Part shown: positions 13,901 to 46,432 of the stretch, piece by piece
Layout of the letters: each line of letters begins with the position of its first letter
How positions within the stretch are numbered: position 1 is the stretch's first letter
DNA from: Mytilus trossulus
Lineage: Eukaryota
Length of the DNA stretch: 64,000 bases
Direction of reading: 5' to 3'
Assembly: GCF_036588685.1 (NCBI RefSeq)
Contig: NC_086384.1
Coordinates: 41,602,001 to 41,666,000 of the forward strand
The notes under the pieces: generated by a model
Seen by the model: the letters and a program-made list of their open reading frames with translations, nothing else
Databases searched by the model: none
Told to the model about the DNA's origin: nothing
Made by a program: the position numbers and the translations under genes

Positions 13901-16900
13901 TACATGTTAATACAATATATGAATTCAAAACAACAAAACAAAAATAAACATGTGAATAATCAACTGATAAAATTATGATTGTATATGTGCCCTAGCTGCT
14001 TGAAATTCGGTTGTGTCAGACACTAAAAGCTACATTATGACCAAAAAGATCTCTACTTCAAAAGTTTATTGCAACCGTTTAATGTGCATTGCTTGATAAC
14101 ATCAGCACAATAGATAGCAGACCTTTTGAAGACATGAAAAATCAAAAGTAAAAAAATAGGCATCTCTGTTTCTCATGTCTTATGTCATGTCATGGCATAT
14201 GTCATGTATGTTATGTCACATGTCATGAAATATGCCATGTCACATGTCATGTTATGTGTCAGGTCACATGTCATGAAATATGTCATGTCATATAACATGT
14301 CATAATGTTATATGCCATGCCATAATATATCACTTATCATGTCATATGTCATGTCATATTATCCATGTGTGAATATCTCACAATTCTAGTTAAATTTAAC
14401 TGTATGAGGGTTATTTTGAATAGCCCTAAAATAATAATTTTCATATTTCATACTTCATTATCTAAAAAGGAGTGACATAGACATAGACATACAATGCATA
14501 ATATTTAGAATAATATTTTTTTTAGAGCTTGTGACTGGAAATGGTGAAAATGAAGAAGACAACAATTCTGAAGCTTGTTCTGCAATAAGTAATACAGGTA
14601 TGATTTTTAAATGGTGTTTTTTAAACATTTAACACACAATGTTATAATTTAAGCTTTATGAAGACTTTTGAGAAGGAAATAATTAATACCAATAGTTGTT
14701 GGGATGTGAACTTGGCAATTGCAAATCTAGATTTAGATTTGGCTTTTGATCATGCTAATGTATTGAACATTTCTGCCATTTTCAGTTTATCTTTATTAGT
14801 CCCCTACCAACAAAGTTTAAGTGGACTTTAGGGTTTGCACTCTGTCCGTCTGTCTGGCAAATCAGCTTTCCACACTTTTTTGTCATGCTTGATGGTCTCT
14901 TGTTTGAATTGTTTTACTCTGGTCACTGACTATGGGGTATGCACTTTGCTCATTATTGAAGACAATTACAACCAAAACCAAGGAGATAATACAAACTCAA
15001 AAAACCAAAAGAAATTAACAACAACAATAAAAAATAAGAAATAAGAAATAACTCCACTGAAAAACAGGAGTGAAATTAGGTGTTCCGGAAGGCTGTACAG
15101 TGACCTATGGTTGTTAATTTCTATGTCATTTTGAATCTTGTGAAGAGCTATCCCTTTGGCAATCACACCACATCTTCTTTTTTGAAGATATTGGTTAGAA
15201 ATTTGGTATATAATAATTAATATAACCATTACAAGTAGGAGATCAGGTGCTAGTTTAGTTCCCTTCTGATGATTTTTTGCTGAGTTGTGGCCCTTGAACT
15301 TAGAAATATCACATAAGTAATTTCTTTTCGGCCCTTTTTTCATCATGCTTGAAGGTAGACTTCACATTTGCCATATAGTTTAACCATGAAAAGTTATAGA
15401 AAAAGTTTGAATTGAGTTCCGGTCTGGTATATTTTTTTTGCAGAGTTATGGTCCTTGGACTGAAAAATTCACTCTGATGTTCTCAAATTGTTGGTTTTTC
15501 ACATTTTGTTTTTTGATCTTTTTTAATTGCTTAAAAACATTGACTTGAAATTTGGCATGTAGTTAAACCTTGACAAGTTACAGGTCAAATGTGAATTGTG
15601 TTTCTGTATGATGATTCTTTGCAGAGTTATGGTCATCAGACATAGAAAATTAATGCAAGAAATAAATTTTCCACTCTTTTTTTTTCATACTTAATAGTTT
15701 TGATTTGATATTTGGTTTATGGTCAAACCATTACAAGTTATAGATCAAGTTTAAATTTTGTTCTGATTTGATGATATTTTTCAGATTTATATGATCATTG
15801 TACTTAGAAAATCACACAATGAATCAATTTTCTGCACTTTTTTTTTAGTCATGCTCGACTACCGTTATATTGATTTGATATATGGTATATTTAGTTTTTT
15901 TACATGTATCAAGTTCGAATTTTGTTTTCGGGAACAATGCATTTTAACTAAAAGGGAACTATACTTATTGCCATGCAATACTCTCAGAATGCAGATAGAC
16001 TAAATTCCGTTAATGTAATAGATTTAAGGGTACTGTATTGTCATCAATAGGCAAAACTCTGAACTATTTTTAGAGTTTTATATGCCATAACATGACTTAA
16101 TAAAAAAAACAATTGAAATTGCCTAGTCTATACACATGATACAATAACATGTATGAAAAAACCAGCAGCCAGATTTATATATAACAAAAAACAATCAACA
16201 AAAAAATACAAATAAGAAACACATCAAGTCCATTAAACATAAATTGTGGAAATAAATCCATCAAACAATGATCATTGTGATGTCATATATATAGCATTAT
16301 TTATCAAAATCAGTATATTTTTTATTCTTTTTTACAGAATTTGCAGCTGATGGCAAACTTGAAGATATCATGATGGATACTGCAATGTCTATGGATTCAG
16401 GTATAATATCTGTTTACTAAAATTGCACTTTTTGTCTCTTTTTCATTTAAAAAAAACTATGCAATTTAGGTTTGTTTTTATTATACCCAACATACAAAGT
16501 TTTAGAGGGTAAATAGGAAGTACTCTGTCTATCTGTCCATATTTCCTGTAAGCACAAAACCTCAACAAAAGGATAGATACTGATGAAACTTTACACAGAT
16601 GCAATAAACAATCTGAGGATGTCCATGAAGAAAATAATCCTGGTCAGAAATATTTCAAGGGAAATAATTAAACATACTTAGTTTAATATTACAATATGTG
16701 GCAACATATCTCATATGTGCAACTCATCCATAATGGCTTAATTCATATTTACACATTTGCAGTACACTACCTGAGAATGTGCACGAAAAAAAAAAATCCT
16801 GGTCTGAAATATTTAAGGGAGATAATTGAATGCACTTCTTTTAATATTGCAATATGTGGCAAGAGGTCTAAGTGTAACTTAAAAGCTTGATCAATATTGA

Positions 16901-28662: not shown

Positions 28663-31100
28663 TTACTCTTCTCCTGGTGCTTGACAAAATGCAGCCTGAT
28701 GTTCCTTCCTAGCATATGGACGGACTTTTGAATATAGATATTCATGCCTAGTACGTGAAAGTCCGGCTGCAGGAATAACTTCTGGACGAGCCAACGGATC
28801 AAACTCTTCTAAGGGACGGCGAAGAATGTTTATTTCTTTTTCAATCCCATCTTATTTTTCTTTAACAATAACAATACCCGGTTTGTCATGACGGAAGACG
28901 AAATGATGATACTTTCTGATACCTGGAACAGGTTTAAACAACACAGATAAAAAAGATTTCCAATCTTTCCATTGCCAGGTTATTTCATTATTCTCTTGGT
29001 TATACTGAACAACTTCATTTGATGATGATGATTTTCGGAATACGTCCGCTAAATGAGATACAGTATCGCAGTTTGATCGTCGGAACAGTTTTTTTGCTTG
29101 ACCAAATCCAGCGTCTACCAAACATTTTGTATGACCAGGAAACTGCATCATTAGGCTTATTTTCTGGTGTTGTCCAGTTAGCACACGCCAAGCAAGATAG
29201 CCAGTCATATATCGATTTTTGTTTTCTCCTACAATAAAAGAACAAGTATTAAAATACTTTTATTTGTTGGGTGTTAAATATATTTACGCTTCATTTAATT
29301 GGTAGTTTTATTTTCAATTTAATTCCTCTAAATTGTTCAGTTTTATCTTAAATAGAACAGATGTATTGAATAACATGAACTCCTAATACTCCCATAGCAC
29401 TTTCGGTTTTTTATAAGGTTCGTATTGCTCAATTTTTAAACTTTGAATTGCAAGACGAAGAAAAAATGTTTTTTTTTAAATGGAACAGATTAATTTTCTT
29501 AGTTGTGTTGTTTTATATTCTTTGAATCGGGGTCTTTCGAAGTCGACTGTGCGATATTGAGTTTTCTCATTGTTGAAGTACGTGTTTGTCCTATAAATGC
29601 TTACATCCACTTTATTTCTACTTCAATGGATAGTTGTCTCATTTACATTTATACCACATCTCCTTATTATACGACCGCAAACAATTTTAAAGTCGTATAT
29701 TGCTAATTGGTATCATTTTTAAATTGGTTAAGAGGTTATTAATATAAACAAAGTCAATGTACTGAAATTTAAGTGAAAGTAACTTACCTGGACAATTATC
29801 ACAATGGTTCCACATTCAGACTCATTCAGACCGTAACACTCAACAGCATGGTCAAACATGGAAATTGTTGCGTTTGGACCCTTTGTATCTGCACAATCTT
29901 TAAAAATTCCCTCGTCTTCATCAACCAAATAGTTATACTGTTTCCGTTTTCCTTCCATGCATACCCCAAAAACTTTAACCTTTCTACCGGATAAAAAATA
30001 CAGTTGACCGACTTGATCGGTATGATGTGGCAAACTAATACTTTGAGCAAAATCAATTGTATAGTGAACATTCTTTAAAACCTGTCCTTGATTATAGTTA
30101 CTAAACTCGTCGCGAGATTTTGACAACCATCCGTTGTACAGCTCTCGTTCTCTCCTTGCAGCTTCAATATGGGATATGTAATTTTGGGATGTTTCAATTT
30201 TGTCCTCCTCAGTTTGTGCTAGAGTGACAGATTCTCGTAACCTTTTACAAGTAGTACACACATCAGAATGTAAAGAGGCGAATCGTATGTGCGGACAGCA
30301 AGACGACCAGACATTTTTGAATGTTGTTAAGTGGACACTTCTATTTCCATCTGCCTGACATGCTGATATATATGTGTCAAACACAGACTGTTTTGATTCA
30401 CACGTAGGTAACAAAACATGAGGTTCTGAGTCATGTCTGTTAGGTGGGGCAGCTTGTGGTAAACCATGCAGACGAGCATAATTTTTCAAGTATTGTACTA
30501 TATTTGAAATTTCCTCAAATGAAAATGCATTTTTCGGACGTCTATTACAATTTCCATGTTTTCGTGGAGCAATACCATTAGTGTTCATGTGTTTGAGCAA
30601 AGACTTTAAATAAGACTCTCCAATATCATGCGTAAGAAGAAATACATCGCGACAAACCTCTCTGTCGTCAAAGGTATAAGCATATCTAGTTCGCTTTCGC
30701 TCTCCATATCTTGAACGGGATTTATCGACTCCTGTTGATTTCAATTTACCCATTAAGTACATGTCTTTACCTTCTTTTGGTAGTTCATGCATAGATAGTA
30801 TATGAGTTATTATTTCATCTTGTTCAAATTGTTTTATACATTTTGCAAGACAACCACAATCTCCAGTTATTTTGGCCATATTCAAACCTTCATTGTTTAT
30901 ACATATATTATCTCCATTTTGATGTTGAACGAATGCTTCAGCTGCTTGTGCAATTTCATCAGTCTCGGATAAATGTGTGACAGGTTCTGTGTCTTCAAGT
31001 TCATTGTTTTCATTACCATTAATATTATCATTGTCTTCATCATTAAAGTTATTTGAAGGTGGTACATGTAGATATTCCCGATAAATTTCATCTAAATCCT
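28663..31100 (-). pseudogene. Sola1-like DDD transposase (DUF7869-type), disrupted
   Basis: Exon ~31100-29788 (TIDFAQSISLP..QVGQLYF..RKVKVFGVC; a 1-nt frameshift restores HCDNCP), intron 29787-29229, exon 29228-28663 (GENKN, PGHTKCLVDAGFG, WKDWKSFL, GIRKYHHF, GLSRTRHEYLYSKVRPY). Premature TAA at 28852. Confidence 0.8.
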
Positions 31101-31477
31101 GCAATAAACATTTATTAATTTTAAAAGTGTTTACCAAACAAACAAAAATGTAAGCTAAATTAAATAATTATATAGTACAAAAAATAACAGATGAACACTT
31201 TTTTTTAACTAAGAACAATGCGAATGTATCTCTTGTGCAAAATCTCAATCTGTTCATGTTCGTCATCAATATCGACTACTTGTATGGATTACAATAAAAA
31301 GTTTCGCCTAGATATTCCTTATGAGAACATTTTAAATCTGAATAACAACAAAATTATTTGATATAGCCTGACTATACATTTGTTAAGCTTCACTGGTTCA
31401 ATTATACTTAACCCATCAACACAAACACAAGTGGATAAACTAGGATTCTTTATAAAAAAAAGTTAATGGAACTGAGG

Positions 31478-31799
31478 NNNNNNNNNNNNNNNNNNNNNNN
31501 NNNNNNNNNNNNNNNNNNNNNNNNNNNNNNNNNNNNNNNNNNNNNNNNNNNNNNNNNNNNNNNNNNNNNNNNNNNNNNNNNNNNNNNNNNNNNNNNNNNN
31601 NNNNNNNNNNNNNNNNNNNNNNNNNNNNNNNNNNNNNNNNNNNNNNNNNNNNNNNNNNNNNNNNNNNNNNNNNNNNNNNNNNNNNNNNNNNNNNNNNNNN
31701 NNNNNNNNNNNNNNNNNNNNNNNNNNNNNNNNNNNNNNNNNNNNNNNNNNNNNNNNNNNNNNNNNNNNNNNNNNNNNNNNNNNNNNNNNNNNNNNNNNN
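31478..31799. other. Assembly gap (N run)
   Basis: Run of n characters. Confidence 1.
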
Positions 31800-32689
31800 A
31801 ACATATAGTGATATAGTGGCAATACCATTTCAGAAAAACGCGAACCCAACTAAAAACTGATTTTGTTAAGGGCAATATTTGATAATTCAAACTAATGATC
31901 AGTAAAAATATTTGAACAATTTTTCTGAACTTGTTGTAAATTTTATACTATAATTAATAATATGGCTAGCTACATGTAGCTATGTTACAGATGATGATTT
32001 ACAATTTATACACATACATGCAGATGTTACTGTAGTGAGAGTAAAACCTGTCGTCACTTTACTCTGTTCTTGTATGGCGGTAGGTTTATTCAATTACTTA
32101 ATATTCTTGATATTTTAAAGTGTTCAAAACAAGTTTTAATGAATTTAAGCGATATTGTGCGCAATGCAACTTTACAATTAGCATCTTAAATGTATAAATT
32201 GAGAAATATTAATTGAAACGAATTCAAATGAAATCGATGAAAAATCTGTCTTTGTGACACGTTTGACTGTATATGTACATAATTTACAAGTATACTGTTC
32301 GAGAAAAGAAAAACTGTTCCTAAATCATGCATACTGTGTAAAATTATAATTTTGATTTTTCGTGAAAAGTACAGTATTATCAAGATTATTTAAAAATTGA
32401 ACCCATTCCTGTCATTTCGTGAAATGATGAATGTAACTGGTTTTCAAGATAGCTTTTGTCATGTAGTTTCCAACAATAATTATCAAATAATGTCAAGAAA
32501 CCATAAAGTGTATAAGAAAACGATTAATTTTCATTTTCAAATGTTTTTTTTTCAATAATGTTATTTCTATATTATTCCTTGGGGGAGAGGGATTTCAGAA
32601 GTCATTACATTTTCTCATTTTAGGTATAAGTCTCTGGTTCTTTTATTTATTATATTTTGAAGGTATCCATTCGTCGAATAAAAATCTGG

Positions 32690-35410
32690 ATGGGAGAAAA
32701 ATGCTGTTATTTCATTGTCCTGTCCGTTATCTATTTTGTATTCTGGGGTTATATGGCCGGACTATTCGCTCGGCTGTTTCGAGAACCTCGGTGTATTATA
32801 CCTGATGAAGACATGGAAAAGATCGTACAGCAAGAGATAGCCGAACACTACCCTGAGGTACAGAACTATCTTCTGAAATCTACTAATAAGTCTAAAGAAG
32901 CTTCTTATTGTGCTTGGCCGCCTTTGGAATTCGGTAAGTATATACATAGGCAGCTTAGAACAAATGTTCTTGGGAAATGAACCCCTCTATCTATATTTTC
33001 AATGTTTTAAAGTAAATTCTTTTTTATTTATTGAACTTATTTATAAATACATGAGTCGATTTCTCATACAACTTTACAACAACAGTTGTTTTATATGTTT
33101 CTCCTCTACTTTTATTTTCCACGTGGCTTAATAAGTATAGAACACACTATTTTGAGCTGAAAGTACCATTTAGTTGACAGTTTTACTATTCTAATAAACA
33201 CTACACTGTTTTTATATGCATCCAAACTAAGGTTTTTGACCCAAATTTCAACGGTTCCACTGAACATTGTATTAAAAAAAAAATCTTACGTCAGACACTC
33301 AAATCAATCAATGTGTTGATAGTAGATGTTTTTGTGTTCTGTTAAATTGTTCCTTATAGAACTGTTATACTATAATGACTGATGTACCCATATTTTGACT
33401 ACTTTATTTATTGTGTCTGTTTATTTAACGCATCAATGTAAATATAACGGAATTGGATGAGACTGTCATTAAAGTGAGAGGGTTAGCGCTATGGAACCAG
33501 GTTTAATCCACCATTTTCTACATTTGAAAATGCCTGTACCAAGTCAGGAATATGACAGTTGTTATCCATTCGTTTTTGATGCGTTTTGTTATTTGATTTT
33601 GCCATGTGATTATGGACTTTCCTAATTGATTTTCCTCTAAGTTCAGTATTTTTGTGATTTTACTTTTTGAAATGTAAAGCCTGAGGAGCGACCGGTTATC
33701 ACTGTCTTATGGTTAAAAAATGTATTTCAAGATGGGTTATTTTTTTTAATTTATTTTAGAAGGCAGACGTCCTGTAAACAAAGCCGTTTTATCCTGGGAT
33801 AAACTAGAACAAAAGTTTGTTTTCATGGCGGATGGTCATTATAAGCCAAAGTTATGTATCGCATACCAAAAAGTAGCCATTATTGTGGTTGTATACAAAA
33901 CTCCAGAAAGTGAGAAACTATTTCAGATCTTCCTTAACAACATACTACCAAAGTTACGTCGACAACAACTTGAGTTTGGAATTTACGCTGTAAGAGAGCA
34001 GGTCAGTAATCAATATAAAGCCTCCTCATGGGTTTTGGATTTTGTGATAACTTGGCAGTTTGTATAGCGATTATTATATTTTAAAAAAAACTTCAAATGT
34101 TCGTTACTTGACAAAACTTTACTAACTTACTTAGATTTTTTACGAATTTCAAAGAAATCACTATTCGGGGTACTTGTCCACCCTGAAAAATTCGCAATGA
34201 AGTTACATGCATGCCTTAAGTTATAACAGAATTTATCATGCACACTTTAAATTTTGTCTTAGAATACAATGTGAACAATATATGATTAAAATATATTTTC
34301 AAAGGTATCCGGGTTTAGCCTGGCAGAGTTAAAGTCAATCTTTATGGTTAAAAGTTTTAAAAATCATTTCATAGCACATTCATGTCATAGCACATTGTTG
34401 ATATATGCTTAAAAGTTTATGCAGAGATAAAAGGAGACATTCTTAAGAAATTAAATTAAGTACTGTCATCACAATTGCATGTCAGTTTTAGCTTGATATT
34501 TGAAGCCCAATAAGTGAACAAATTTTGCTCTTGTTATCTGTCCTGATTGGTACTTAGCCCACATCTCAAATAAATGATCGAGTTTCTCATTCTCAATTCT
34601 TGATTGGGAAGCCTGTTCATCAATGTACCAAATCTTAATATAATTTACTGACTATTGTTTAATAATGCTCTTCAAAAATATAAAAATGGCAGGATGAGTC
34701 ATGTAAAACTGTGCATTGTAGTGAGCATGGGAGGATTCTGGACCATTTGCTGTACGCTTACTGTATGATGGCTGTTCAGCCTATAATATTCTTCTCATTA
34801 AGATTACAGGTAGTCGACGATAGGTAAAAAGCGCAAATGTCCGGTCAGTTTAATACAGGTGAATCAAAATTAAAAGCGCAAATGTCCATAGTATTTGAAG
34901 CGCAAATGTCCTATCATTTTACAGGTAAAAAAGCACAAATGTCCTGTGCCCGTTATTATATTATTCATATTTCATTATATACCCTTTTTTACCTGAGTTT
35001 ACCTGTAAGATGAATGCGCGCAAATGTAATCAAAAGCTGCGCACAAACGTTAAACATTTTGTCCAATAGAACTTTACTAATATTAGCACTAGTAGTAGAA
35101 GTAGTAGTAGATGTTATTATTACAGTAAAATCGAAAGTACAAGAAGCAGTAGTATAGTAGTAGTCTAGATGTGATCCGTGTGGTAGTAGTAGCAGTTGTA
35201 TTACAAAAAAGAAGTAGATTGAGAGGTATTAGTAGATGTTTAAGGATAAACAGAAGTTACTGTAGTAGTATTGTAATAATAGAAGTGATGATAGCAGAAG
35301 TAGTAGTAGAATAGAAATGGTCATGATGGTGGTACATTGTAGTAGTAGTAGTAGTAGTAGTAGTAATAGTAGTAGAATGTTGTTAGTTTAAGTATATGTT
35401 TAAATAAAAT

Positions 35411-35444
<34 letters not shown>

Positions 35445-38400
35445 TTGAATAAGATAAGTTGTAAAAGTAGTAGTTTAAATTAAAAAAAAAAGAAAGAAAA
35501 AGAGTAGTAGTAGTAGTAGTAGTTGTAGTTTAGGTGTCAGACCACCAATTACTCCCTCCAATTTAGAACGTATGTAAAAGTAACCCTAATCTGACACAAA
35601 ATAGTGCTTTTGATGTCCTTGTTTACTTAAACTAACCAACAAATATGCAGAAATGAAACTTTTGGTGAAAGAGACATATATCTAGATCATTTTGAGTCAA
35701 AATTTACTTGTCTATGAGTTTGCATTAAAAATTGAGGATTAATGCGCTCCATAGTATACTTATTTTAGATTTCCAGAAAACCAGGTTGTTTTTTTTTAGC
35801 ATCTCTGTTGGAAGGTCAGTTAATTTGTTAGAAGGCTTTAAAGGTATGGTGAAAATTGGCATGTAGAATGCTGATACATATACAATTCAGAATATACCTG
35901 GTTTCTATGAAGTTAAACTTAAGGTAAAATATTTAGAAAGCTGTGAAAATTGCAAAATTTGGTTGAACAGATAGGGATTTTTAATTGGTGGTCTGACACC
36001 TATAGTACAAGAGATGCTGTAGTTGAACTTATAGTAGTAATTGCTATCAAAGTATAACTTCAATATTCTTAGAAGTAATTTATTTAAATTACAGATGCCA
36101 GATATTCCAAATCGAGGCTTGCTGTTCAACATAGGGTTCCAGAAAGCCATGACCAATATGAAGTATGATTGTGTGATATTTCACGATGTTGATGTGATAC
36201 CAGAAGATGACAGGAATTATTATGCCTGTGAATATTATCCACGTCACATGGCAAAGAGGATAGACAGAAATAAATATACGTACGTCATGCATTAGACTAC
36301 GAAGACGATCATTCTATTTATCTAGGAGAGAGTTTGAAAATAAAATTTTAGGCCTGTTACAAAGTGAAAATAAACAGTTTGATTAAGACGTGATTAAAAT
36401 GAATATGATTCAACAAAAGGCAGGCAATAGTTGTAAACACATGTATAAATATTTGTTTGTGTTGAAAAAAATCATACATAAACCGAGACCAAATAATCTA
36501 GTCGCTGGATTCGATCACTACGATTGATTGACTGTGATCATAAGGCCAAATAAAAAAGTATGTGTGGTTCCAATTGCATCTTAAAAAAGGTTAGGGTAGG
36601 TAGGTAGGGATTTTTTTTTTTTTTTTATGTTTTATTTTTACATTGAGTCTATGGGAGCAACATTCTGACATTAACATTACTTAATAAAAAATGGCAAAAC
36701 AATCTTTAGGGTAGGCTATTATAGAGACTAAAAAGTTGGGTAGGTAGGGTTACTGGAACCACACATATATTTTTATTTGACCTTACCATTTTTCCGCCAA
36801 AATTTCGTTGGTTCTTTACATGTATTTTAGCTTCCTCAAGCCACAAAATATTGACCATATGATAAAACCATGAATAATAAAACACCATAAATTAATGATA
36901 GTAAGAGGAAAACAGATTATTCAAAAACATGACTATGTGCACAGAATATGATATTTTTAATTTGATCTTAATTTAGATTTGATTGTTTTCACCTTAAATA
37001 CATATGCTGAGATTTTGTCATTTTAGATTGAATTCAGCCAAGCACATACTAAATTGCTCACTTTTATGCATAACATTATTAACATTTAATCATTTGTATT
37101 CAGGCTTCCACATAAAGACTGGGCTGGTGGTATCATTTCCATGAATCCGGAGCAGTACACACAAATAAATGGATGGTCCAATATGTATATTGGAAACCAC
37201 ACAGACAACGAAGACATTTATAGAAGGTATGTCTCGCAATTAAAACTGTACGTTGTGGTTTTGTTGACCACATACATGTACAAATGCATATATATGTCAA
37301 TGCATACTAATATATAGTAAACAAGTTAATCGGCACATATGCAATAACAATACTGAGTAATAAGAAAAGGTGTATAATAAAAAAAGTACACAACGAAATT
37401 GTATATATACGTATCAATAATGCATAGAGATATCCGGAATCACCGGTAAAAAATACAGAACAGTAGAATAAACCCCATTAATCATCATCATCAAATCATC
37501 GGAACAACCAGAAAAAGAAATATTTACAAAAAACAACAGAAAAAACATGATCCGGACAGCATTACTTGTTACAGACCCAAGATACAGTTAAAATTAACAA
37601 GTATTAAGTGCTCTTATCCCCTTTTTGTGTTACCAAACGAGACCAAGGTTAAGCTAGCTATAAAACCTGATTAATCCACTTTTTTCTACATAAGAAAATG
37701 TCCGTACCAAGTCGGAAACATGACAGTTATATCCATTGGTTTGATGTGTTTCAGTTATCAATTTTGTTTAAGGACATTGAATTTTTAATTTTCCTCGGAG
37801 TTCTCCCTGTTACACTAAAAAAACAAAAATGAAAATAGCTCCAGCTCTCAACAATATAATCGATTATAAGAATAAAAAAAAACACATAACGGTGTCCATA
37901 AAAACACAATAAGGTCATAATTGAATCCGAAGGTAAAAGTATACAAGATCACTGAGATGAAGCACACCTCCGAGTGCGGGGTTTTCTCGCTGTGTTGAAG
38001 ACTAATTGGTGGTCTTGGACTGTTTTCAGATCTTTTGGCGGGTTGTTTTCTCGTTGACATATTCCCCATTTCAATTCTCAAATTTATACATATAATCCCT
38101 ATACCTACCGGTAGCCAAATATATTTTCCGAGCTGCTGAGTTCACCTCATTAAAAGTTACCCAACCTTTAAAAGTAATTATTCGAAATACAAACTGAATC
38201 TGTGTTAAAACAACTATGTTCTCCTACTTCAACACCATGTACATTAGTAGGTGAATAACACATAAGAATGCTTGAATAGAATAGGTTAGAATGATAGATC
38301 TATCAAGTTATATTGCTCTATTATTTTCAATTTACTGCACAAATACAAAACTGAGTGCCATGGATGTATTTTGTAGAATAGTGACCCATTATGACTTAGT

Positions 38401-41400
38401 TCGAACTGAAGATAAATACTCGTACTGTGGCAGTACATCTGATAAAACAGAACTTCCTAACAAGGAAGGGTAAGTATAGAGCAAGCAACAAAAGTTCAAT
38501 TTTGAAGTTGAAGTTTTTAAAATTATTTCAAGTAAGGGTGGAAGATACTAAGGAGACATACAAGGAATTTGTTTTGGTGCCGGCTGATAAAGCAGCTAAT
38601 AATATGATTCATTATGGTTTGAAGTAAATTTTATATTGAGGTTCTGCAAAATGAAATCACGAATTCACCAACATTCCAACTGACTTCATTTAAAAAAAAC
38701 TACATCTGTAACAAACACAAACTTTTAGCTTCTTCTTTACTAGCCGAACCAAATACAATGAGAGTTCCAACTATGTACTGGCTTCCTAAGCTACACAAAA
38801 AACCTTACCAATATAGATTTATTTCATCTTCAAGCCATTGCTCCACTACTAAATTGTATATTCTACTTATTTGTACACTTGGTAAATAAAAAAACTGATA
38901 ATGAATTGTTCAAAGTTATCAAAGGTACCAGGATTATAATTTTGTACGCCAGACGCGCGTTTCGTCTACATAAGACTCATCAGTAACGCTCATATCAAAA
39001 CATTTATAAAGCCAAACAAGTAAAAAGTTGAAGAGCATTGAGGATCCAAAATTCCAAAAAGTTGTGCCAAATATGGCTAAGGTAATCTATGCCTGGGATA
39101 AGAAAATCCTTAGTTTTTCGAAAAATTCAAAGTTTTGTAAACAGGAAATTTATAAAAATGACCACATTATTGATATTCATGTCAACACTTCGGTGTTGAC
39201 AACTGGGCTGGTGATACCCTCGGGGACGAAACGTCCACCAGCAGTGGCATCGACCCATTGGTGTAAAAAGTTATCAAAGGTACCAGGATTATAATTTTGT
39301 ACGCCAGACGCGCGTTTCGTCTACATAAGACTCACCAGTGACGCTCATATCAAAACATTTATAAAGCCAAACAAGTAAAAAGTTGAAGAGCATTGAGGAT
39401 CCAAAATTCCAAAAAGTTGTGCCAAATACGGCTAAGGTAATCTATGCCTGGGATAAGAAAATCCTTAGTTTTTTCGAAAAATTCAAAGTTTTGTAAACAG
39501 GAAATTTATAAAAATGACCACATTATTGATATTCATGTCAACACTTCGGTGTTGACTACTGGGCTGGTGATACCCTCGGGGACGAAACGTCCACCAGCAG
39601 TGGCATCGACCCAGTGGTGTAAAAAGTAATCAAAGGTACCAGGATTACAATTTTGTACGCCAGACGCGCGTTTCGTCTACATAAGACTCATCAGTGACTC
39701 TCATATCAAAACATTTATAAAGCCAAACAAGTAAAAAGTTGAAGAGCATTGAGGATCCAAAATTCCAAAAAGTTGTGCCAAATACGGCTAAGGTAATCTA
39801 TGCCTGGGATAAGAAAATCCTTAGTTTTTCGAAAAAATCAAAGTTTTGTAAATAGGAAATTTATAAAAATGACCACATTATTGATATTCATGTCAACACT
39901 TCGGTGTTGACTACTGGGCTGGTGATACCCTCGAGGACGAAACGTCCACCAGCAGTGGCATCGACCCAGTGGTGTTAAAAGTTATCAAAGGTACCAGGAT
40001 TATAATTTTGTACGCCAGACGCGCGTTTCGTCTACATAAGACTCATCAGTGACGCTCATATCAAAACATTTATAAAGCCAAACAAGTAAAAAGTTGAGGA
40101 GCATTGAGGATCCAAAATACCAAAAAGTTGTGCCAAATACGGCTAAGGTAATCTATGCCTGGGATAAGAAAATCCTTAGTTTTTCGAAAAATTCAAAGTT
40201 TTGTAAACAGGAAATTTATAAAAATGACCACATTATTGATAATCATGTCAACACCTCGGTGTTGACTACTGGGCTGGTGATACCCTCGGGGACGAAACGT
40301 CCACCAGCAGTGGCATCGACCCAGTGGTGTAAAAAGTTATCAAAGGTACCAGGATTATAATTTTGTACGCCAGACGCGCGTTTCGTCTACATAAGACTCA
40401 TCAGTGACGCTCATATCAAAACATTTATAAAGCCACAAGTAAAAAGTTGAAGAGCATTGAGGATCTAAAATTCCAAAAAGTTGTGCCAAATACGGCTAAG
40501 GTAATCTATGCCTGGGATAAGAAAATCCTTAGTTTTTCGAAAAATTCAAAGTTTTGTAAACAGGAAAATTAGGCCTTTGAAAATTGTGGAATTAATTACT
40601 TTTGGAGTGTCAAAAACTAGATGAAAGTACTTGATAAATTGCATGCATACCGGTATATTGCTGATTTTAATCTGTACAAAGTTTTGATTTGTCTACCCTA
40701 TATACCACTTTGCCACATATTCTTATGAAGAAAAAAATCACATCCCTAATTAACTGGGCATTTAAAGAGTCAGAATGCGAGTACATATGTTCAAACTCTT
40801 TTAAGTAGCTATAAACAAAAAAAATATGTTAATTGGAAATGCTTTTATACTATATTTGTGCTTGAATTTTTACTTGATAATATTTTTCTTCGCTTTGGAG
40901 ATTCCGTATATCGTCAAGTTATTGGAATTCCAATGGTGTCTAACTGTGCACCAATTATTGCGGACATGTTTTTGTATTGTAATGAGTTACAATTTATGAC
41001 TAAAAACTAGCAAAGACATATCGAAACAACATTTGATACAGAAATTTAACAATAATTTTATATATTTGGATGATATATTGGCTCTCAATAATGACACCCT
41101 CAGTATGTATTCTTAAGAAATTTATCCGGTAGAACTTACTTTAAATAAAGCGAATACTAATAATGACCATTGCCTTTTCCTCGATTTTGATATCTATATC
41201 ATTAACGGGAAGCTTAATACAAAAATTAATGATAAAAGAGATGATTTTTCATTTCCTATCGTTAACTATCCATTTTTAGTAGGTGACGTTCCCTTGTCAC
41301 CATCTTATGGTGTTTACATATCTTAACTTGTACGATTCGCTCGTGTATGTAACAACGTATTATATTTTAGCGAGAGACATTTATGTATTAATGAAAAATT

Positions 41401-44400
41401 ATAACACTAGGTTTTCGATATCACAAACTAATCAAAACTTTTACTAAATTTTATCATCACATAAGGAAATTCGTAAAAATAACTCAACATGCAGACATTT
41501 TATACGTTCAGGTATTTCACATCCAATCTTTTATGGTAATATTCTTTACAAAGCACATAAATGTCAGTATTCACCTTAAAAGCTTACACAACCTTTAAAC
41601 AGACTTATTAAGAAGGGATATAGTTACGATACTGTTGTCAGGTCATTAAAGATTGCATTTTTTGGCTTTAATATTGATTCTCTTGTAGGTTCTTTGGACA
41701 GTTGTTGGCATGAAACGGGTTATGTTCTTTTCATACATTTTATGATAGTAAATGATGATACTAAACCCCTAACGGGAGGGATTGTGCCTGATATTCATAT
41801 GATGAAGACATTATCTTTCAATCAGTTTAATTGAGGTTTGGAGCTGTCATGTCAGTTAACTGCCAGTAGCCTGTTGTTATTTCTGTATTATTGTCATTTT
41901 GTTTATTTTCTTTTGTTACATTTCTGACATCGGACTCGGACTTTTATTGAACTAAATTTTAATGTGCGTATTGTTATGCGTTTACTTTTCTACATTGGCT
42001 AGAGGTATATGGAGGGTTGAGATCTCATAAACATGTTTAACCCCGCCGCAATTGTGCGCCTGTCCCAAGTCAGGAGCCTCTGACCTTTGTTAGTCTTGCA
42101 TAATTTTTAATGTAGTTTCTTGTATGTAATTCGGCGTTAAGTATGACGTCCATTTTCACTGAACTAATATACATATTTTTAAGGGATCAGCTGAAGAACG
42201 CCTCCGGGTGCAGAAGTTTCTCTCTACATTGAAGACTCATTGTTGGCCTTCGGCTGTTGTCTGCTCTATGGTCGGGTTGTTGTCGCTTTGACACATTTCC
42301 GATTTCATTTCTCAATTTTATACACACTGATAAATTGATAGACACTGAAAACGCCATGACATAAAATAACAATAGACGACAATACCTGTGGTGAAATTCT
42401 TCCCAAAACTTCAAATCATTTCTTTAACCTCTGAGCACATTTTTTCCTAAACCTTTATGCAAACCGTTTCCCTAACCTCTGTTTATATTCGAACCTACAC
42501 CTCAGATCATATCCTTTCTTCAACCTCTAGCCGGATTGTTTCATTAACCACTGGTCATATTCTACACTAAACATTGGTCATACTTTCCCTTGAAACTCCG
42601 ATCATATCTATCTTTTAACCTTTGATTATATTCTTCCTTCAATCTTATACACCAAACATCTTCGACCACAAGGGTGTAAAAATGTAAAAATCAAAACCTT
42701 CCTATTGCTTCTGTTGCCTAAACTTAATCATATTCCTAAATTACATGTTTTGTTCATTACTTTCCCTGTACACGTTATATTTGTTTAAACCTCTCTAAGT
42801 TTGTTACTGGCGTTCCTGATGAAGGTTATGAAATTTCATTTTTACATTGTGTTTTGTTTCAATTTCTAGCAGCGGGTCAATAACACTTCTGGTGGACTGT
42901 TTGTCTCTAGGGTCGTCAGTCCTGTAGTAATTGCTTAGCTAATGACATGATTAATGCAATAGAAATTGTAAAGATAGCACGGTTCCTTCTCTCTCAGGGA
43001 AAGTTGCCCTTCAATGATTTTGATTATTTATTTATTTATTTCCCTTTTGTAATATAGATCATGTAGTCATACATCCCCGGTTTTGGTTTCAACTGTTCCT
43101 ATTAACCATGGTAAAGTTTGAAAAACGACTCGGTGCATCACATGCGAGTAGTTTTATCCTTCGTCGTATTTTAACCTCTTACCATACTTTGTCTTAAAAC
43201 TTTAAGAATATTATAACATAAGCATGAAATCTATTTAAGCTATCCTCCAATTGAATGTAGATGATATTTCATAGTTTCCTCAGTTCTGTATTCTTCAATT
43301 CTTTTGTACGTTGTACACATTATTTACCATTTTGTTGACCGTTATATTCTGTTTGACAGGTATTCTATGTTCTTTCTAATTTCGCACACCATAATTTTCT
43401 CACTTCATTGTTTTAGCTTTTTTCCTTTATTCTTTTTACATGTTTTATCAATCATTTCCTTTTGCTTGCCCCATCCACAACTTCATCTCATCCCATCATA
43501 AGAAAGGGAAAATTTAGTTTGATAAGCATACAAATCAATTACTGTAACCCAACGTATTTCCGCAGATACTTATTTGAGCGTTTAGCCCTTTCTAGCCCAT
43601 TTCACAATTCTCAAATTCACTGGATATAAATTAGGGGGAAATCCAAGTTATACACATTCGCGAAGATTTATATTCGCGATATTTTCTACTCGCGGAAATA
43701 AATCGCTCGCGGAAATAAATCGCTCGCGAAAATAAATTGGTTAACAGTACTATTTGATTGATTATGATCGTTAAGGATAACCCTATAGGACATGACAGAT
43801 TTACATCATGTATCAACACTCGGCAAATTTCTTAGATAATTATATCAAGATAATTTTCTACCAGTGGAGTATATTACTTAAGCTGGTTTTTGTAAAACCT
43901 TTCCAGATTCCTGAATGTCCTTTCACTTTTTAGCCTTTTGTATTCGAGGATTACTGACGAGTCTTCAGTAGAAGAAAATCGCGTTTTGATTTATGTTATA
44001 AATAAAAGCAATAGTTGTATGCCGCTGTTCAATAGTCATAAATCAATTTAACTCTCAACCAAAACTGAAACAAATCAAATAAAAGAAGAAAACAATGGAG
44101 TAACAGGAACACAAAAGTTCTACAAAACCTAAGGCCAATTTACATAGAAACTGACTGTGATAACAACTGACATATATCTGAATTATGTATGTACATTGTT
44201 TAAAAAATGGTGGGTTGAATCAGGTTTTGTGGCTGGCCAAAACTCCCGCTTATAAAATATGCAAAATACAAAAAATGCTTTATGTATTTTATCTTATTTC
44301 GAAGATGTTGGTCGTTTGAGAAAACCGGTAGAACCTGGCAAATCGATGGTCTCAACAACACAGCATATGAGAAAGCAGAAATACTTAACAAAAAACTCTT

Positions 44401-45159: not shown

Positions 45160-46432
45160 TTATAAATTTATTATAAATTAAGTAATGAATCTCCCTCATG
45201 CAAAGCTCTGATTCCTTTCACGGATTTTGCTATACTTTTGGGATCTTTTGGATTATAGCTCTTCATTTTTTATCTAAGCTTTAGGTTTCAAATATTTTGG
45301 GCACGAGCATCACTGAAGAGACATGTATTGTCGAAATGCGCATCTGGTGCAGAATTTTTTTTACCGTTAATGATATAACTACCACTGGGTCAATGCCTCT
45401 GCTGGTAGACTGTTAGTCCCCGAGGGTATCACCAGCCCAGTTGCCAGTACTTCGGTACTGGCATAAAAATACGGATTTATTTTTTTTATTATTAAAATTT
45501 CTGATACAAAATGTTAGCAATTATTATAAATTAAAGACTGCATCTCCCTCATGCAAAGCTCCGATTCCTTTCACGGATTTGGCTATACGTTTTGGACCTT
45601 TTGGATTATAGCTCTTCGTCTTTTATCTAAGCTTAAGGTTTCAAATATTTTGGCCACGATCATCACTGAGAGACATGTATTGTCGAAATGCGCAACTTGT
45701 GCAGAAAAATTTGTACCGTAAATGATATGACTACCACTGGGCCGATATCTCTGCTTGTGGACTGTTAGTCCCCGAGGGTATCACCAGCCCAGTAGCCAGT
45801 ACTTCGGTACTAGCATGAAAATACGGATTTTTTTTGGTTATTAAAATTTGCTGTAACAAAATGTTAGAAATTATTATGAATAAAGGAATGCATCTCCCTC
45901 ATGCAAAGTTCAGATGCCTTTCACGGATTTGGCTATACTTTTTTGACCTTTTGGATTATAGCTCTTCCTCTTTTATATAAGCTTTGGGTTTCAAATATTT
46001 TGGACACGAGCATCACTGAAGAGACTTGTATTGTAGAAATGCGCATCTGACGTAGGAAAATCGGTACCTTTAATGATATTACTACCATTGGGTCGATGCC
46101 TCTGCTGGTGGGCTGTTAGTCCCCGAAGGTATCACCAGCCCAGTAGCCAGTACTTCGGTACTGGCATGAAAATACTGATTTTTTTTGGTTATTAAAATTT
46201 GCTGTTACAAAATGTTAGAAATTATTATAAATTAAGGAATGCATCTCCCTCTTTTAAAGCTCTGATTCCTTTCACGGATTTGGCTATACTTTTTGGACCT
46301 TTTGGATTATAGCTCTTCATCTTTTATATAAGATTTGGGTTTCAAATATTTTGACCACGAGCATCACTGAAGGGACATATATTGTCGAAATGCGCATCTG
46401 GTGCAGGAAAATTGGTACCGTTAATGATATTA
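45160..46432 (+). repeat. Retrozyme array 2: ~3.6 tandem copies of a ~351-bp unit, one hammerhead each
   Basis: Hammerhead motifs at 45307, 45660, 46010 and 46361; units more diverged than array 1. Confidence 0.92.
45307..45350 (+). ncRNA. Type I hammerhead ribozyme (array 2, intact copy)
   Basis: GCAUCA-CUGAAGA-GACA UGUAU UGUC-GAAA-U GCGC A-UC^-UGGUGC; AUC cleavage triplet. Confidence 0.9.

What the first reader, a model, noticed from the sequence alone, without database searches (positions are those of the whole stretch)
38914..40568. Tandem hammerhead-ribozyme (retrozyme) array inserted inside a Penelope-like reverse transcriptase
Seen: five minus-strand type I hammerheads spaced exactly 355-356 bp apart. 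The array splits the RT remnant cleanly (...TGTTCAAA | array | TTAGGCCTTTG...). Copy 2 has a core mutation (CUGGUGA), copies 1 and 3 have stem I mismatches, and copies 4 and 5 are intact. Established: metazoan non-LTR retrozymes self-cleave into ~350-nt monomers that circularise, and are thought to be mobilised by Penelope-like RTs; a palindromic minimal stem III favours dimeric cleavage. Inference: a young rolling-circle-type insertion that could produce a 355-nt circRNA antisense to the host GT7 intron, sitting in a dead copy of a candidate helper family.
Basis: partly seen in the sequence, partly recalled or inferred. Interest (0 to 1): 0.8.

Follow-up and report, generated by a model that had tools for sequence, protein, structure and literature searches.

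The report
Mussel hammerhead retrozyme array in Naiad remnant
This is a real 4.7-unit copy of the published mussel "retrozyme", a non-coding jumping repeat with one self-cutting hammerhead ribozyme per 355-base unit, that landed inside a dead Penelope-like retrotransposon; the kind is known and the location looks coincidental.

Summary
There is a 355-bp tandem array at about 38912-40571, 4.7 units at 97% identity. It carries five minus-strand type I hammerheads spaced 355-356 bp apart, one of them with the CUGGUGA core mutation.

It belongs to the published Mytilus retrozyme family (Cervera & de la Peña 2020, PMC7229834). Their cloning primers match every unit with 1-2 mismatches, and the genome holds thousands of copies. 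This scan already has about 75 notes on such arrays elsewhere in this genome.

The host element is a 5'-truncated, decayed Penelope-like element of the Naiad clade, which lacks hammerheads. Eleven paralogs show an uninterrupted site, so the insertion is clean and has no target-site duplication.

- All 18 complete family insertions sampled end about 37-45 nt after the cleavage site, while their 5' ends vary.
- The four full units here differ only by private changes, consistent with copying from one monomer template.
- RNA-seq shows very high, mainly ribozyme-sense, family-level expression with head-to-tail junction reads.
- This array's own diagnostic variants appear in only a few percent of reads or fewer, so expression of this locus is not shown.
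- Flanks of 18 other insertions show no preference for Penelope-like elements.

Verdict: a known kind, of low to moderate interest.

The parts
38912..40571 (-). Retrozyme array: 4.7 units of 355 bp. In ribozyme-sense orientation it starts 5'-truncated at unit position about c157 (window ~40568) and ends at about c40 (window ~38915). c1 is the first base after the GUC cleavage site.
   Evidence: Tandem Repeats Finder; unit dissection; paralog empty site.
40367..40410 (-). Hammerhead copy 5, intact. Predicted cleavage between 40373 and 40372.
   Evidence: RF00163, 33.0 bits, E 1.3e-5.
40012..40055 (-). Hammerhead copy 4, intact. Predicted cleavage between 40018 and 40017.
   Evidence: RF00163, 33.0 bits.
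39657..39700 (-). Hammerhead copy 3, with one A-G mismatch in stem I. Predicted cleavage between 39663 and 39662.
   Evidence: RF00163, 33.4 bits.
39301..39344 (-). Hammerhead copy 2, with the core mutation CUGGUGA (A6 to G). Expected to be inactive.
   Evidence: RF00163, 25.7 bits; the change is private to this unit.
38946..38989 (-). Hammerhead copy 1. A C-to-U change in stem I leaves a G-U wobble. Predicted cleavage between 38952 and 38951.
   Evidence: RF00163, 30.2 bits.
38912..38951 (-). 3' tail of the insertion (c1 to about c40, ...GGTACCTTTGATAAC+TTT). It occupies the same end position as every other sampled insertion of the family. The last TTT overlaps the target's TTT.
   Evidence: 18 of 18 complete insertions end at c36-c45. 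RNA loose ends at c38 run into heterogeneous sequence.
40248..40328 (-). Conserved structured domain (about c45-c125, one example unit): nested helices plus an 8-bp hairpin. In a multimer or circle it lies immediately 3' of the fixed insertion end. It is shared with the published Mg353 clone and with the second family at 45160-46432.
   Evidence: Published primer 110R matches here and at 45772 and 46123; minimum-free-energy fold; supplement sequence compared by eye.
38561..38911 (+). Left part of the host Naiad Penelope-like element remnant. It runs from the DKA motif (KEFVLVPADKAANN) onward and is broken by stops and frameshifts.
   Evidence: 88-90% identical to at least 40 paralogs, all starting at this point; translations.
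40572..42324 (+). Right part of the host Naiad remnant: the reverse transcriptase core (FDLSTLYTT, GIPMVSNCAP, YLDD, KRDDFSFPIVN), the thumb and the 3' untranslated region. It is decayed.
   Evidence: 85-88% identical to paralogs over about 1.45-1.75 kb; translations; a model of the paralog ORF matches telomerase reverse transcriptases.
37955..38090 (+). Pseudo-LTR-like direct repeat of 42189-42324 (77% over 136 nt), upstream of the truncated Naiad body.
   Evidence: blastn of the two flanks against each other.
36041..36295 (+). Exon-like segment of the host GT7 (beta-1,4-galactosyltransferase-like) gene. Further plus-strand GT7-like segments lie at about 32657-32980, 33825-34067 and 44282-44400.
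   Evidence: Pfam Glyco_transf_7N, E 7.7e-17; ORF translations. The 44.3-kb segment rests on a motif only (DGLNNTAY) and has no Pfam hit.

Best explanation
The array is one genomic copy of the Mytilus non-LTR retrozyme, a non-coding, non-autonomous retroelement with one type I hammerhead per unit of about 355 nt.

Shown here:
- The family is dispersed in thousands of copies.
- Every sampled insertion shares one 3' end, about 37-45 nt downstream of the ribozyme cleavage site. 5' ends and lengths vary from 0.25 to more than 9 units.
- This copy sits cleanly in an older, dead Naiad-type Penelope-like element, with only a 0-3 nt A/T microhomology and no target-site duplication.
- Its four full units differ only by private mutations.
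- Family RNA is very abundant, mostly ribozyme-sense if the libraries are of the usual first-mate-antisense kind, and it contains head-to-tail junctions.

Inferred mechanism:
- Arrays are transcribed, hammerheads cut them to 355-nt monomers, and a host ligase closes them into circles. These steps were shown at the bench for a close relative by Cervera & de la Peña.
- A reverse transcriptase supplied in trans, most likely from a Penelope-like element, then primes on a nicked target at the U-run after ...GAUAAC of a circular (or multimeric) RNA.
- It runs round the template several times and stops at a random point.
- That gives a multi-unit, 5'-truncated array with a fixed 3' end.

This particular copy has since picked up about 1.2% changes per unit, including one that should kill ribozyme 2. 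It contributes little or nothing to the RNA pool. It is a decaying passenger in a GT7-like gene intron, antisense to the gene.
For: - Array and ribozymes.
- Same family as the published, bench-tested Mytilus retrozyme. Primers 109R and 110R match each unit with 1-2 mismatches against 0 expected by chance. The Mg353 construct in the supplement is visibly homologous. The paper reports about 5000 hammerheads in 350-390-bp repeats, in vitro self-cleavage and abundant circular RNA.
- Copy number and dispersal: 3947 first-look candidates spread over the chromosome-scale contigs at 92-97% identity.
- Fixed 3' end with variable 5' end: 18 of 18 complete insertions.
- About 375 RNA reads per run leave the unit at c38 into heterogeneous sequence.
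- The second family's array in this window ends at the equivalent point.
- Clean insertion compared with 11 paralogs.
- Star-like units: 17 singleton columns and 0 informative columns. All pairs are 97.5-97.8% identical, and 7 differences from other loci are shared by the whole array.
- RNA depth is 1000-3000x on the unit against 0-35x on the flank. 'Goes back 353' joints appear in 106 to 1241 reads per run. There is no pile-up of read ends at the cleavage site.
- Host element is a Naiad: GIY-YIG C-terminal part, KR-rich block, CxC, GPKYRPP and DKA in paralogs, matching Craig et al. 2021. The fold is closest to telomerase reverse transcriptases.
Against: - All five hammerheads score just below Rfam's gathering cut-off.
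- Self-cleavage and circularity were not tested on this sequence. Head-to-tail reads cannot separate circles from multimeric transcripts.
- Strand assignment assumes the usual library chemistry.
- Star-like units would also arise from a multimeric transcript of a homogeneous source array, or from a very recent local amplification.
- The reverse transcriptase that moves the family is not identified.
- Target-site duplications are absent here and only weakly enriched elsewhere: 33% of insertions have a repeat of 7 nt or more, against 11% in mismatched controls.
- The 18-locus sample is drawn from the best-scoring copies and is small.
Confidence: 0.85

Rival explanations
1. Ordinary satellite DNA that happens to contain a hammerhead-like motif. 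It would have expanded locally by replication slippage or unequal crossing-over, with no RNA intermediate.
For: It is a head-to-tail tandem array. At least one family array (L016) shows higher-order structure, with 46 informative columns, so DNA-level amplification does occur after insertion.
Against: Thousands of dispersed copies share a fixed 3' end and have variable 5' truncation. The insertion sits precisely in a site that 11 paralogs show uninterrupted. This array has no shared sub-array variants and no neighbour effect. The RNA is very abundant and strand-biased. Bench evidence is published for the family.
Confidence: 0.04
2. The array was copied from a linear multimeric transcript of an older, homogeneous array by target-primed reverse transcription. 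No circular template and no rolling-circle reverse transcription would be involved.
For: It predicts the same fixed 3' end and 5' truncation. About a quarter of reads at c38 run on into flanking DNA, which shows that read-through transcripts of genomic copies exist. Junction reads cannot tell circles from multimers.
Against: The insertion 3' end (c37-45) is not at a transcript end that any known signal would create. It lies inside every unit of a multimer, so internal initiation is needed either way. Zero informative sites among 4 units requires a perfectly homogeneous source. The published northern blots found mostly circular RNA in mussel tissues.
Confidence: 0.25
3. The hammerheads belong to the Penelope-like element itself, as pseudo-LTR ribozymes, rather than to a separate inserted element.
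For: Canonical Penelope-like elements carry hammerheads in their pseudo-LTRs.
Against: The array is on the opposite strand, in the middle of the reverse transcriptase coding region, and absent from all 11 paralogs examined. The host is a Naiad, a clade reported to lack canonical hammerheads. No hammerhead is found elsewhere in the remnant.
Confidence: 0.01

Closest known systems
Mytilus galloprovincialis non-LTR retrozymes (Cervera & de la Peña 2020, NAR 48:5054; clone Mg353)
   Same: Unit size of about 353-355 nt. The hammerhead is nearly identical (…GAGCGUCACUGAUGAGUCUU(A/U)UGUAGACGAAACGCGCGUC/UGGCGUA…). The same conserved second domain is present (CCACUGGGUCGAUGCCACUGCUGGUGGA…CCGAGGGUAUCACCAGCCCAGUAGUC). 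Composition is AT-rich, the organisation is tandem, there are thousands of copies, and the RNA is abundant. Their primers match with 1-2 mismatches.
   Different: This is a sub-family with a somewhat different tail and inter-domain sequence. Most RNA reads are only 90-95% alike. The fixed 3' end and the star-like units were not found in the parts of that paper searched by keyword.
Newt and axolotl satellite 2 retrozymes and other metazoan type I hammerhead repeats (Rfam RF00163)
   Same: Type I hammerhead with a minimal, palindromic helix III (ACGCGCGU). Tandem repeats of about 330-350 bp. Unit-length and circular RNA.
   Different: There is no sequence similarity outside the ribozyme core. 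Amphibian ribozymes need dimers for good cleavage, whereas the mussel clone cleaves from a single motif at about 0.1 per minute.
Penelope-like elements and their non-autonomous derivatives (Craig et al. 2021; Li, Clavereau & Pollet, bioRxiv 2026)
   Same: 5' truncation, head-to-tail partial tandems and weak or absent target-site duplications. The hammerhead sits close to the 3' end. Retrozymes are proposed to be non-autonomous relatives of Penelope-like elements.
   Different: No Penelope-like element in this genome was found that shares the hammerhead plus tail. The only shared piece is a 29-nt tail motif that is internal to a young Naiad's 3' untranslated region repeats. The (TA)n target preference reported for Naiads is not seen for this family.
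Plant LTR retrozymes
   Same: Hammerhead-bounded unit, circular RNA intermediate, non-autonomous.
   Different: Plant elements have type III ribozymes, long terminal repeats, a primer-binding site, a polypurine tract and 4-bp target-site duplications, and are moved by Gypsy elements. None of these is present here.

Membership tests
Metazoan non-LTR retrozyme | One type I hammerhead per unit with the conserved core CUGANGA / GAAA / UH and three helices | tested here: met
   Five RF00163 matches cover the whole model. The core is intact in 4 of 5; copy 2 has A6 to G.
Metazoan non-LTR retrozyme | Short head-to-tail tandem repeats (about 170-400 bp) with low GC and no coding capacity | tested here: met
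   Period 355, 4.7 copies. GC is about 0.33-0.36. Only short ORFs lie inside the array (up to 88 aa); they were not searched against protein families.
Metazoan non-LTR retrozyme | Dispersed, multi-copy, with hallmarks of retrotransposition | tested here: met
   3947 candidates across the chromosome-scale contigs. Fixed 3' end with variable 5' end in 18 of 18. Paralog empty site.
Metazoan non-LTR retrozyme | Self-cleavage at the predicted site | not testable with these tools
   Published for the close relative Mg353. Reads show no excess of ends at 40372/40373, which fits sealed (circular) or uncut RNA.
Metazoan non-LTR retrozyme | Unit-length circular RNA | tested here: inconclusive
   Head-to-tail 'goes back 353' joints appear in 106-1241 reads per run at family level. 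Circles and multimers cannot be told apart. Array-diagnostic variants are seen in only a few percent of reads or fewer.
Rfam Hammerhead_1 (RF00163) | Score at or above the curated gathering threshold (34 bits) | tested here: not met
   The best score is 33.4 bits, and there are no hits at gathering. E-values of 1e-5 to 3e-3, full-length alignment and five-fold periodic recurrence make the motif real despite the 0.6-bit shortfall.
Published Mytilus retrozyme family | Sequence identity with the cloned family | tested here: met
   Primers 109R (1 mismatch, 5 sites) and 110R (1-2 mismatches, 4 sites here plus 2 in the neighbouring array), against 0 expected by chance. The full Mg353 sequence was compared by eye only.
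Penelope-like element, Naiad clade (host of the insertion) | N-terminal GIY-YIG, KR-rich block, CxC motif, GxKF/Y, DKA instead of DKG, then the reverse transcriptase | tested here: met
   Paralog L037 reads ...WIKKLQTAYPLGLN..., RKNRSHGRRKNRNQRK, MSCNCS, GHKCRPP, VPADKAANN. Paralog L035 carries GPKYRPP and a 480-aa reverse transcriptase frame. The criteria come from Craig et al.. The window copy keeps only DKA onward.
Penelope-like element, Naiad clade (host of the insertion) | Reverse transcriptase fold related to telomerase reverse transcriptase | tested here: met
   AlphaFold model with pLDDT 81. The top 14 Foldseek hits in the PDB are all telomerase reverse transcriptases, E 5e-9 to 4e-6. 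By sequence, Pfam RVT_1 is only weak, matching 8 of 23 homologs with best E 0.0012.
Penelope-like element, Naiad clade (host of the insertion) | No canonical hammerhead of its own | tested here: met
   There is no RF00163 hit in the remnant outside the inserted array.

The most novel reading that the evidence does not exclude
Retrozyme cDNA synthesis may not start at an RNA end at all. It may start at a fixed internal site about 40 nt 3' of the ribozyme cut, directly 5' of the conserved structured domain. In that reading a telomerase-related Penelope-like reverse transcriptase docks on that domain of the circular RNA and copies the circle repeatedly. The 29-nt start-site motif (UUAUAAUCCUGGUACCUUUGAUAACU.UU) recurs at the end of the 270-305-nt repeats in the 3' untranslated region of a very young, apparently active Naiad family. 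That would name the hammerhead-less Naiads, not the canonical hammerhead-bearing elements, as the mobilisers of mussel retrozymes.
Probability: 0.15. Interest if true: 0.65.

Novelty: already known. Interest (0 to 1): 0.25.

Why it matters
As a locus it matters little. It is one of thousands of copies of a family that was already cloned, cleaved in vitro and shown as circular RNA in mussels, and its position in a dead Penelope-like element appears to be chance.

Its modest value is as clean natural evidence for how animal retrozymes are copied. An empty-site comparison, a fixed 3' end that is not the ribozyme cut site, and strictly private inter-unit differences together fit target-primed, multi-round copying of a single monomer template. 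The published model proposes this step but does not document it.

A genome-wide version of these three measurements, plus identification of the partner reverse transcriptase, would make the retrozyme/Penelope relationship directly testable in an invertebrate.

Tried and rejected
- The Rfam gathering scan of the whole window returned nothing. The ribozymes only appear with E-value thresholds.
- The plus-strand CUGGUGA...GAAAC...GUC stretch in each unit looked like a second hammerhead. It does not fit one: its flanks do not form helix I, and the 'core' is part of the GCUGGUG/CACCAGC stem. No Rfam ribozyme matched the plus strand.
- I first read the own-genome hit table as showing a canonical 1.25-unit insertion with a fixed 5' end at query position about 306. 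Remapping showed that this came from how hits were split, and 5' ends are variable.
- Pfam and PDB sequence searches could not classify the host protein: no Pfam hit and no PDB hit. Classification needed motif comparison with Craig et al. plus a fold search.
- Target-site duplication: none at this site and only weak enrichment elsewhere.
- Preference for Penelope-like elements: 0 of 18 other insertions interrupt a Penelope-like coding region. Coding content of flanks is 2.6%, against 3.9% in this window.
- Five of the 30 GIY-YIG loci did contain retrozyme pieces. The one examined closely (L060) lies outside the element, because homology to its sister copy ends 209 nt after the stop.
- Search for the helper element. 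A canonical C-terminal-endonuclease element (L043/L060/L061) has no matching tail. A young Naiad (L073-L075) shares only the 29-nt tail motif, which is internal in 20 of 20 copies.
- The GT7C-type exon expected between 36.3 and 44.3 kb was not found by motif search. The ORF at 44282 has no Pfam hit.
- Exons of the host gene were searched one by one.
Full report
**What is there**

Tandem Repeats Finder reports one array at 38912-40571 with period 355, 4.7 copies, 97% matches and no indels. The default Rfam scan of the window gave nothing. With E-value thresholds, Hammerhead_1 (RF00163) matches the minus strand five times, each over the full model:
- 38946-38989 (30.2 bits)
- 39301-39344 (25.7 bits)
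- 39657-39700 (33.4 bits)
- 40012-40055 (33.0 bits)
- 40367-40410 (33.0 bits)

The family's gathering score is 34, so the three best copies miss it by 1 bit or less. Spacing is 355, 356, 355 and 355 bp.

Copy 2 has CUGGUGA (A6 to G). Copy 3 has a C-to-A mismatch in stem I. Copy 1 has a C-to-U change that still pairs as G-U. Copies 4 and 5 are intact.

Helix III is the 8-nt palindrome ACGCGCGU, which is two base pairs plus a GCGC loop within one molecule. A co-fold of two 60-nt ribozyme segments pairs the two palindromes with each other, at -33.1 against 2 x -12.6 kcal/mol. A dimeric form is therefore possible.

**It is a known family**

Cervera & de la Peña (NAR 2020, PMC7229834) reported the following for Mytilus galloprovincialis:
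- about 5000 type I hammerheads in 350-390-bp repeats;
- in vitro self-cleavage of a cloned genomic unit, at about 0.1 per minute;
- abundant, mostly circular RNA in gonad and mantle.

Their primers 109R and 110R match every unit here with 1-2 mismatches, against 0 matches expected by chance. Their construct Mg353 shows, by eye, the same ribozyme, the same second conserved domain and a similar AT-rich body.

The window's genome is 1.30 Gb in 541 contigs. A search with one unit gave 3947 first-look candidates, and the scored ones lie on the chromosome-scale contigs at 92-97% identity. This scan already holds about 75 notes on retrozyme arrays in this genome.

**The host element**

The flanks carry a broken plus-strand reading frame. 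The left flank from 38561 and the right flank to about 42026-42320 are 85-90% identical to many paralogs, with 1569 first-look candidates.

Paralogs with open frames show the C-terminal part of a GIY-YIG domain, a KR-rich block, a CxC motif (MSCNCS), GPKYRPP and VPADKAANN, followed by the reverse transcriptase. This is the diagnostic architecture of the Naiad clade of Penelope-like elements, which has DKA in place of DKG and an N-terminal endonuclease (Craig et al. 2021, PMC8557442).

Sequence libraries did not classify the protein:
- Pfam has no hit for it.
- RVT_1 is only weak, matching 8 of 23 homologs.
- A profile search of the PDB found nothing.

An AlphaFold model of the 480-aa paralog frame reached pLDDT 81. 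Its best 14 structural matches are all telomerase reverse transcriptases, with E 5e-9 to 4e-6. That is what is expected of a Penelope-like reverse transcriptase.

The window copy is 5'-truncated at the DKA motif. It has a 136-nt direct repeat (37955-38090 against 42189-42324, 77%) that resembles a pseudo-LTR. Naiads are reported to lack canonical hammerheads, and none is found in this remnant outside the array.

**The insertion site**

Eleven paralogs read ...AATAAATTGTTCAAATAAGGCCTTTGAAAAT... without interruption. The window reads ...TTGTTCAAA[array]TTAGGCC....

The array is therefore a later, precise insertion without a target-site duplication of 4 nt or more. In element orientation the 3' junction is ...GAUAAC-UUU-GAACAA, where the UUU could come from either the element or the target. 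This is the kind of microhomology expected when a nicked target primes on the RNA.

The array lies between plus-strand GT7-like coding segments. The segment at 36041-36295 hits Pfam Glyco_transf_7N at E 7.7e-17. Further GT7-like ORFs lie at about 32.7, 33.8-34.0 and 44.3 kb. The array is thus most likely intronic and antisense to the gene. The 44.3-kb segment rests on a motif only.

**How the family inserts**

I mapped 26 family loci against the unit, with c1 defined as the first base after the GUC cut. All 18 distinct complete insertions end at c36-c45 (...GGTACCTTTGATAAC, then T or TATT). Their 5' ends fall anywhere in the unit (c2, c78, c122, c216, c247, c297, c330, c341 and others). Lengths run from 0.25 to more than 9 units.

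The window array starts at about c157 and ends at about c40. The second retrozyme family in this window (45160-46432, plus strand) ends about 33 nt after its own ribozyme's cut site, in an equivalent GGTACC...TGATATT tail.

RNA reads give independent support. In each of four runs about 375 reads leave the unit at window 40335 (c38) and continue into heterogeneous AT-rich sequence. These are read-through transcripts from many loci that share that boundary.

The fixed end is not the ribozyme cleavage site. The template therefore cannot be a linear cleaved monomer copied from its 3' end. Initiation must be internal, on a circle or a multimer.

**Unit genealogy**

The four full units are 97.5-97.8% identical in every pairing, with no neighbour effect. 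All 17 variable columns are singletons and none is parsimony-informative. Seven further positions are shared by all four units but differ from the majority of 29 units from other loci.

Each unit therefore carries about 4-5 private changes (about 1.2%) acquired after a single-sequence origin. This fits several rounds of copying of one monomer. The A6-to-G change of ribozyme 2 is one of these private changes.

A six-unit array elsewhere (L006) is also star-like, with 15 singletons and 1 informative column. A nine-unit array (L016) shows higher-order structure, so DNA-level amplification also occurs.

The host Naiad copy differs by 10-15% from its paralogs, so the insertion is younger than its host.

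**Expression**

Four RNA-seq runs with the same species label were laid on 40214-40900, which covers one unit plus the flank.
- Depth is about 1000-3000x on the unit and 0-35x on the flank.
- In three runs the first mate lies on the plus strand several times more often than on the minus strand (roughly 2- to 12-fold by bin). In the usual library chemistry this means minus-strand, ribozyme-sense RNA. The fourth run is unstranded.
- 'Goes back 353' joints (40566 to 40214) occur in 530, 632, 1241 and 106 reads.
- No excess of read ends is reported at the cleavage site. This fits ligated circles or uncut multimers, and the two cannot be separated with these data.

The RNA is not shown to come from this locus:
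- At most about 1% of laid reads are 99% or more alike.
- The array-diagnostic bases at 40256-40258 are replaced in about 84-100% of reads, depending on position and run (about 98% in the largest sets).
- Other variants of the laid unit are replaced in about 84-100% of reads (40242 in nearly all; 40334 and 40422 in most).
- Reads crossing 40571 continue as the next unit rather than into the Naiad flank.
- Flank reads carry paralog variants.

**Is the location meaningful?**

I used 53 Penelope-like protein queries covering Naiads and canonical C-terminal-endonuclease elements from this genome. None of the 18 other insertions interrupts a Penelope-like coding region. Such sequence makes up 2.6% of their flanks, against 3.9% of this window.

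The sample is small, with a 95% upper bound of about 15%, but it gives no sign of targeting. Five of the 30 GIY-YIG loci did contain retrozyme pieces. I did not test whether that exceeds what general clustering of transposable elements would give.

**Which element moves it?**

This was not resolved. [quoted passage not shown]

The only link found here is a 29-nt stretch of the retrozyme tail (c13-c41). It is 86-90% identical to the last 29 nt of a 270-305-nt repeat unit in the 3' untranslated region and pseudo-LTR of a very young Naiad family. That family has frames of 965-1056 aa and at least 40 copies that are 100% identical over 399 nt. The local alignment score is 38, against 21 +/- 2.7 for shuffles.

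In 20 of 20 copies the motif is internal and is followed by GTATGCAC.... It lies about 420 nt from that element's 3' terminus. It is a lead, not an identification.

**Verdict**

The kind and the family are already published, and the scan has met them many times. The locus itself looks like a decaying, poorly expressed or silent passenger. Its position inside a dead Penelope-like element appears coincidental, and that element is of the hammerhead-less Naiad clade. The modest added value lies in the fixed internal 3' end, the empty-site proof and the star-like units.

Noticed in passing
L073:1464-6598 (G000:C9:~8153967-8159101); also L074, L075: A very young Naiad-type Penelope-like family. It has frames of 965-1056 aa, 535-946-nt pseudo-LTR repeats at 96-99% identity, and at least 40 genomic copies 100% identical over a 399-nt 3' untranslated region query. 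That region contains 1-2 or more tandem units of 270-305 nt, each ending in a 29-mer that is 86-90% identical to the retrozyme tail c13-c41.
   Followed up: partly
window 45160-46432 (+): A second, more divergent retrozyme array on the opposite strand, about 69% identical to this unit. It shares the structured domain: primer 110R matches at 45772 and 46123. It ends about 33 nt after its own ribozyme's cut site, the same relative 3' end as the first family. Rfam did not score its hammerheads at E of 5 or below.
   Followed up: partly
window 43945-43990 (+): A decayed hammerhead-like stretch (…ACUGACGAGUCUUCAGUAGAAGAAAAUCGCGUU…), 81% similar to c323-354 of the retrozyme. It is probably a relic of an older insertion. 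Weak similarity to the second domain also appears at 42874-42928.
   Followed up: no
window 40328-40248 (-) and the equivalent in each unit: In a multimer or circle, the conserved structured domain begins immediately after the fixed insertion 3' end. It is therefore the first thing downstream of the inferred cDNA start site, which makes it a candidate docking site for the reverse transcriptase.
   Followed up: no
L043, L060, L061 (G000:C2:70.80 Mb; C4:3.04 Mb; C6:21.66 Mb): A canonical C-terminal GIY-YIG Penelope-like family whose 3' end abuts (TA)n microsatellite sequence. It shows no similarity to the retrozyme tail.
   Followed up: partly
L043-L072 (30 GIY-YIG loci): Five of the 30 Penelope-like loci of 3.3 kb each contain retrozyme fragments. 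That is more than the genome-wide density would suggest, even though retrozyme flanks are not enriched for Penelope-like coding sequence. It may simply reflect clustering of transposable elements.
   Followed up: no
window 14174-14335: A long palindromic or hairpin-like stretch that gives weak, sub-threshold Rfam hits on both strands (MIR4371 at 36.5 bits against a 110-bit cut-off; Mu-gpT-DE). It is probably an inverted-repeat element.
   Followed up: no
window 29728-31137 (-): A 469-aa open frame next to the N-run at 31478-31799. It was not examined, and the N-run was left untouched.
   Followed up: no
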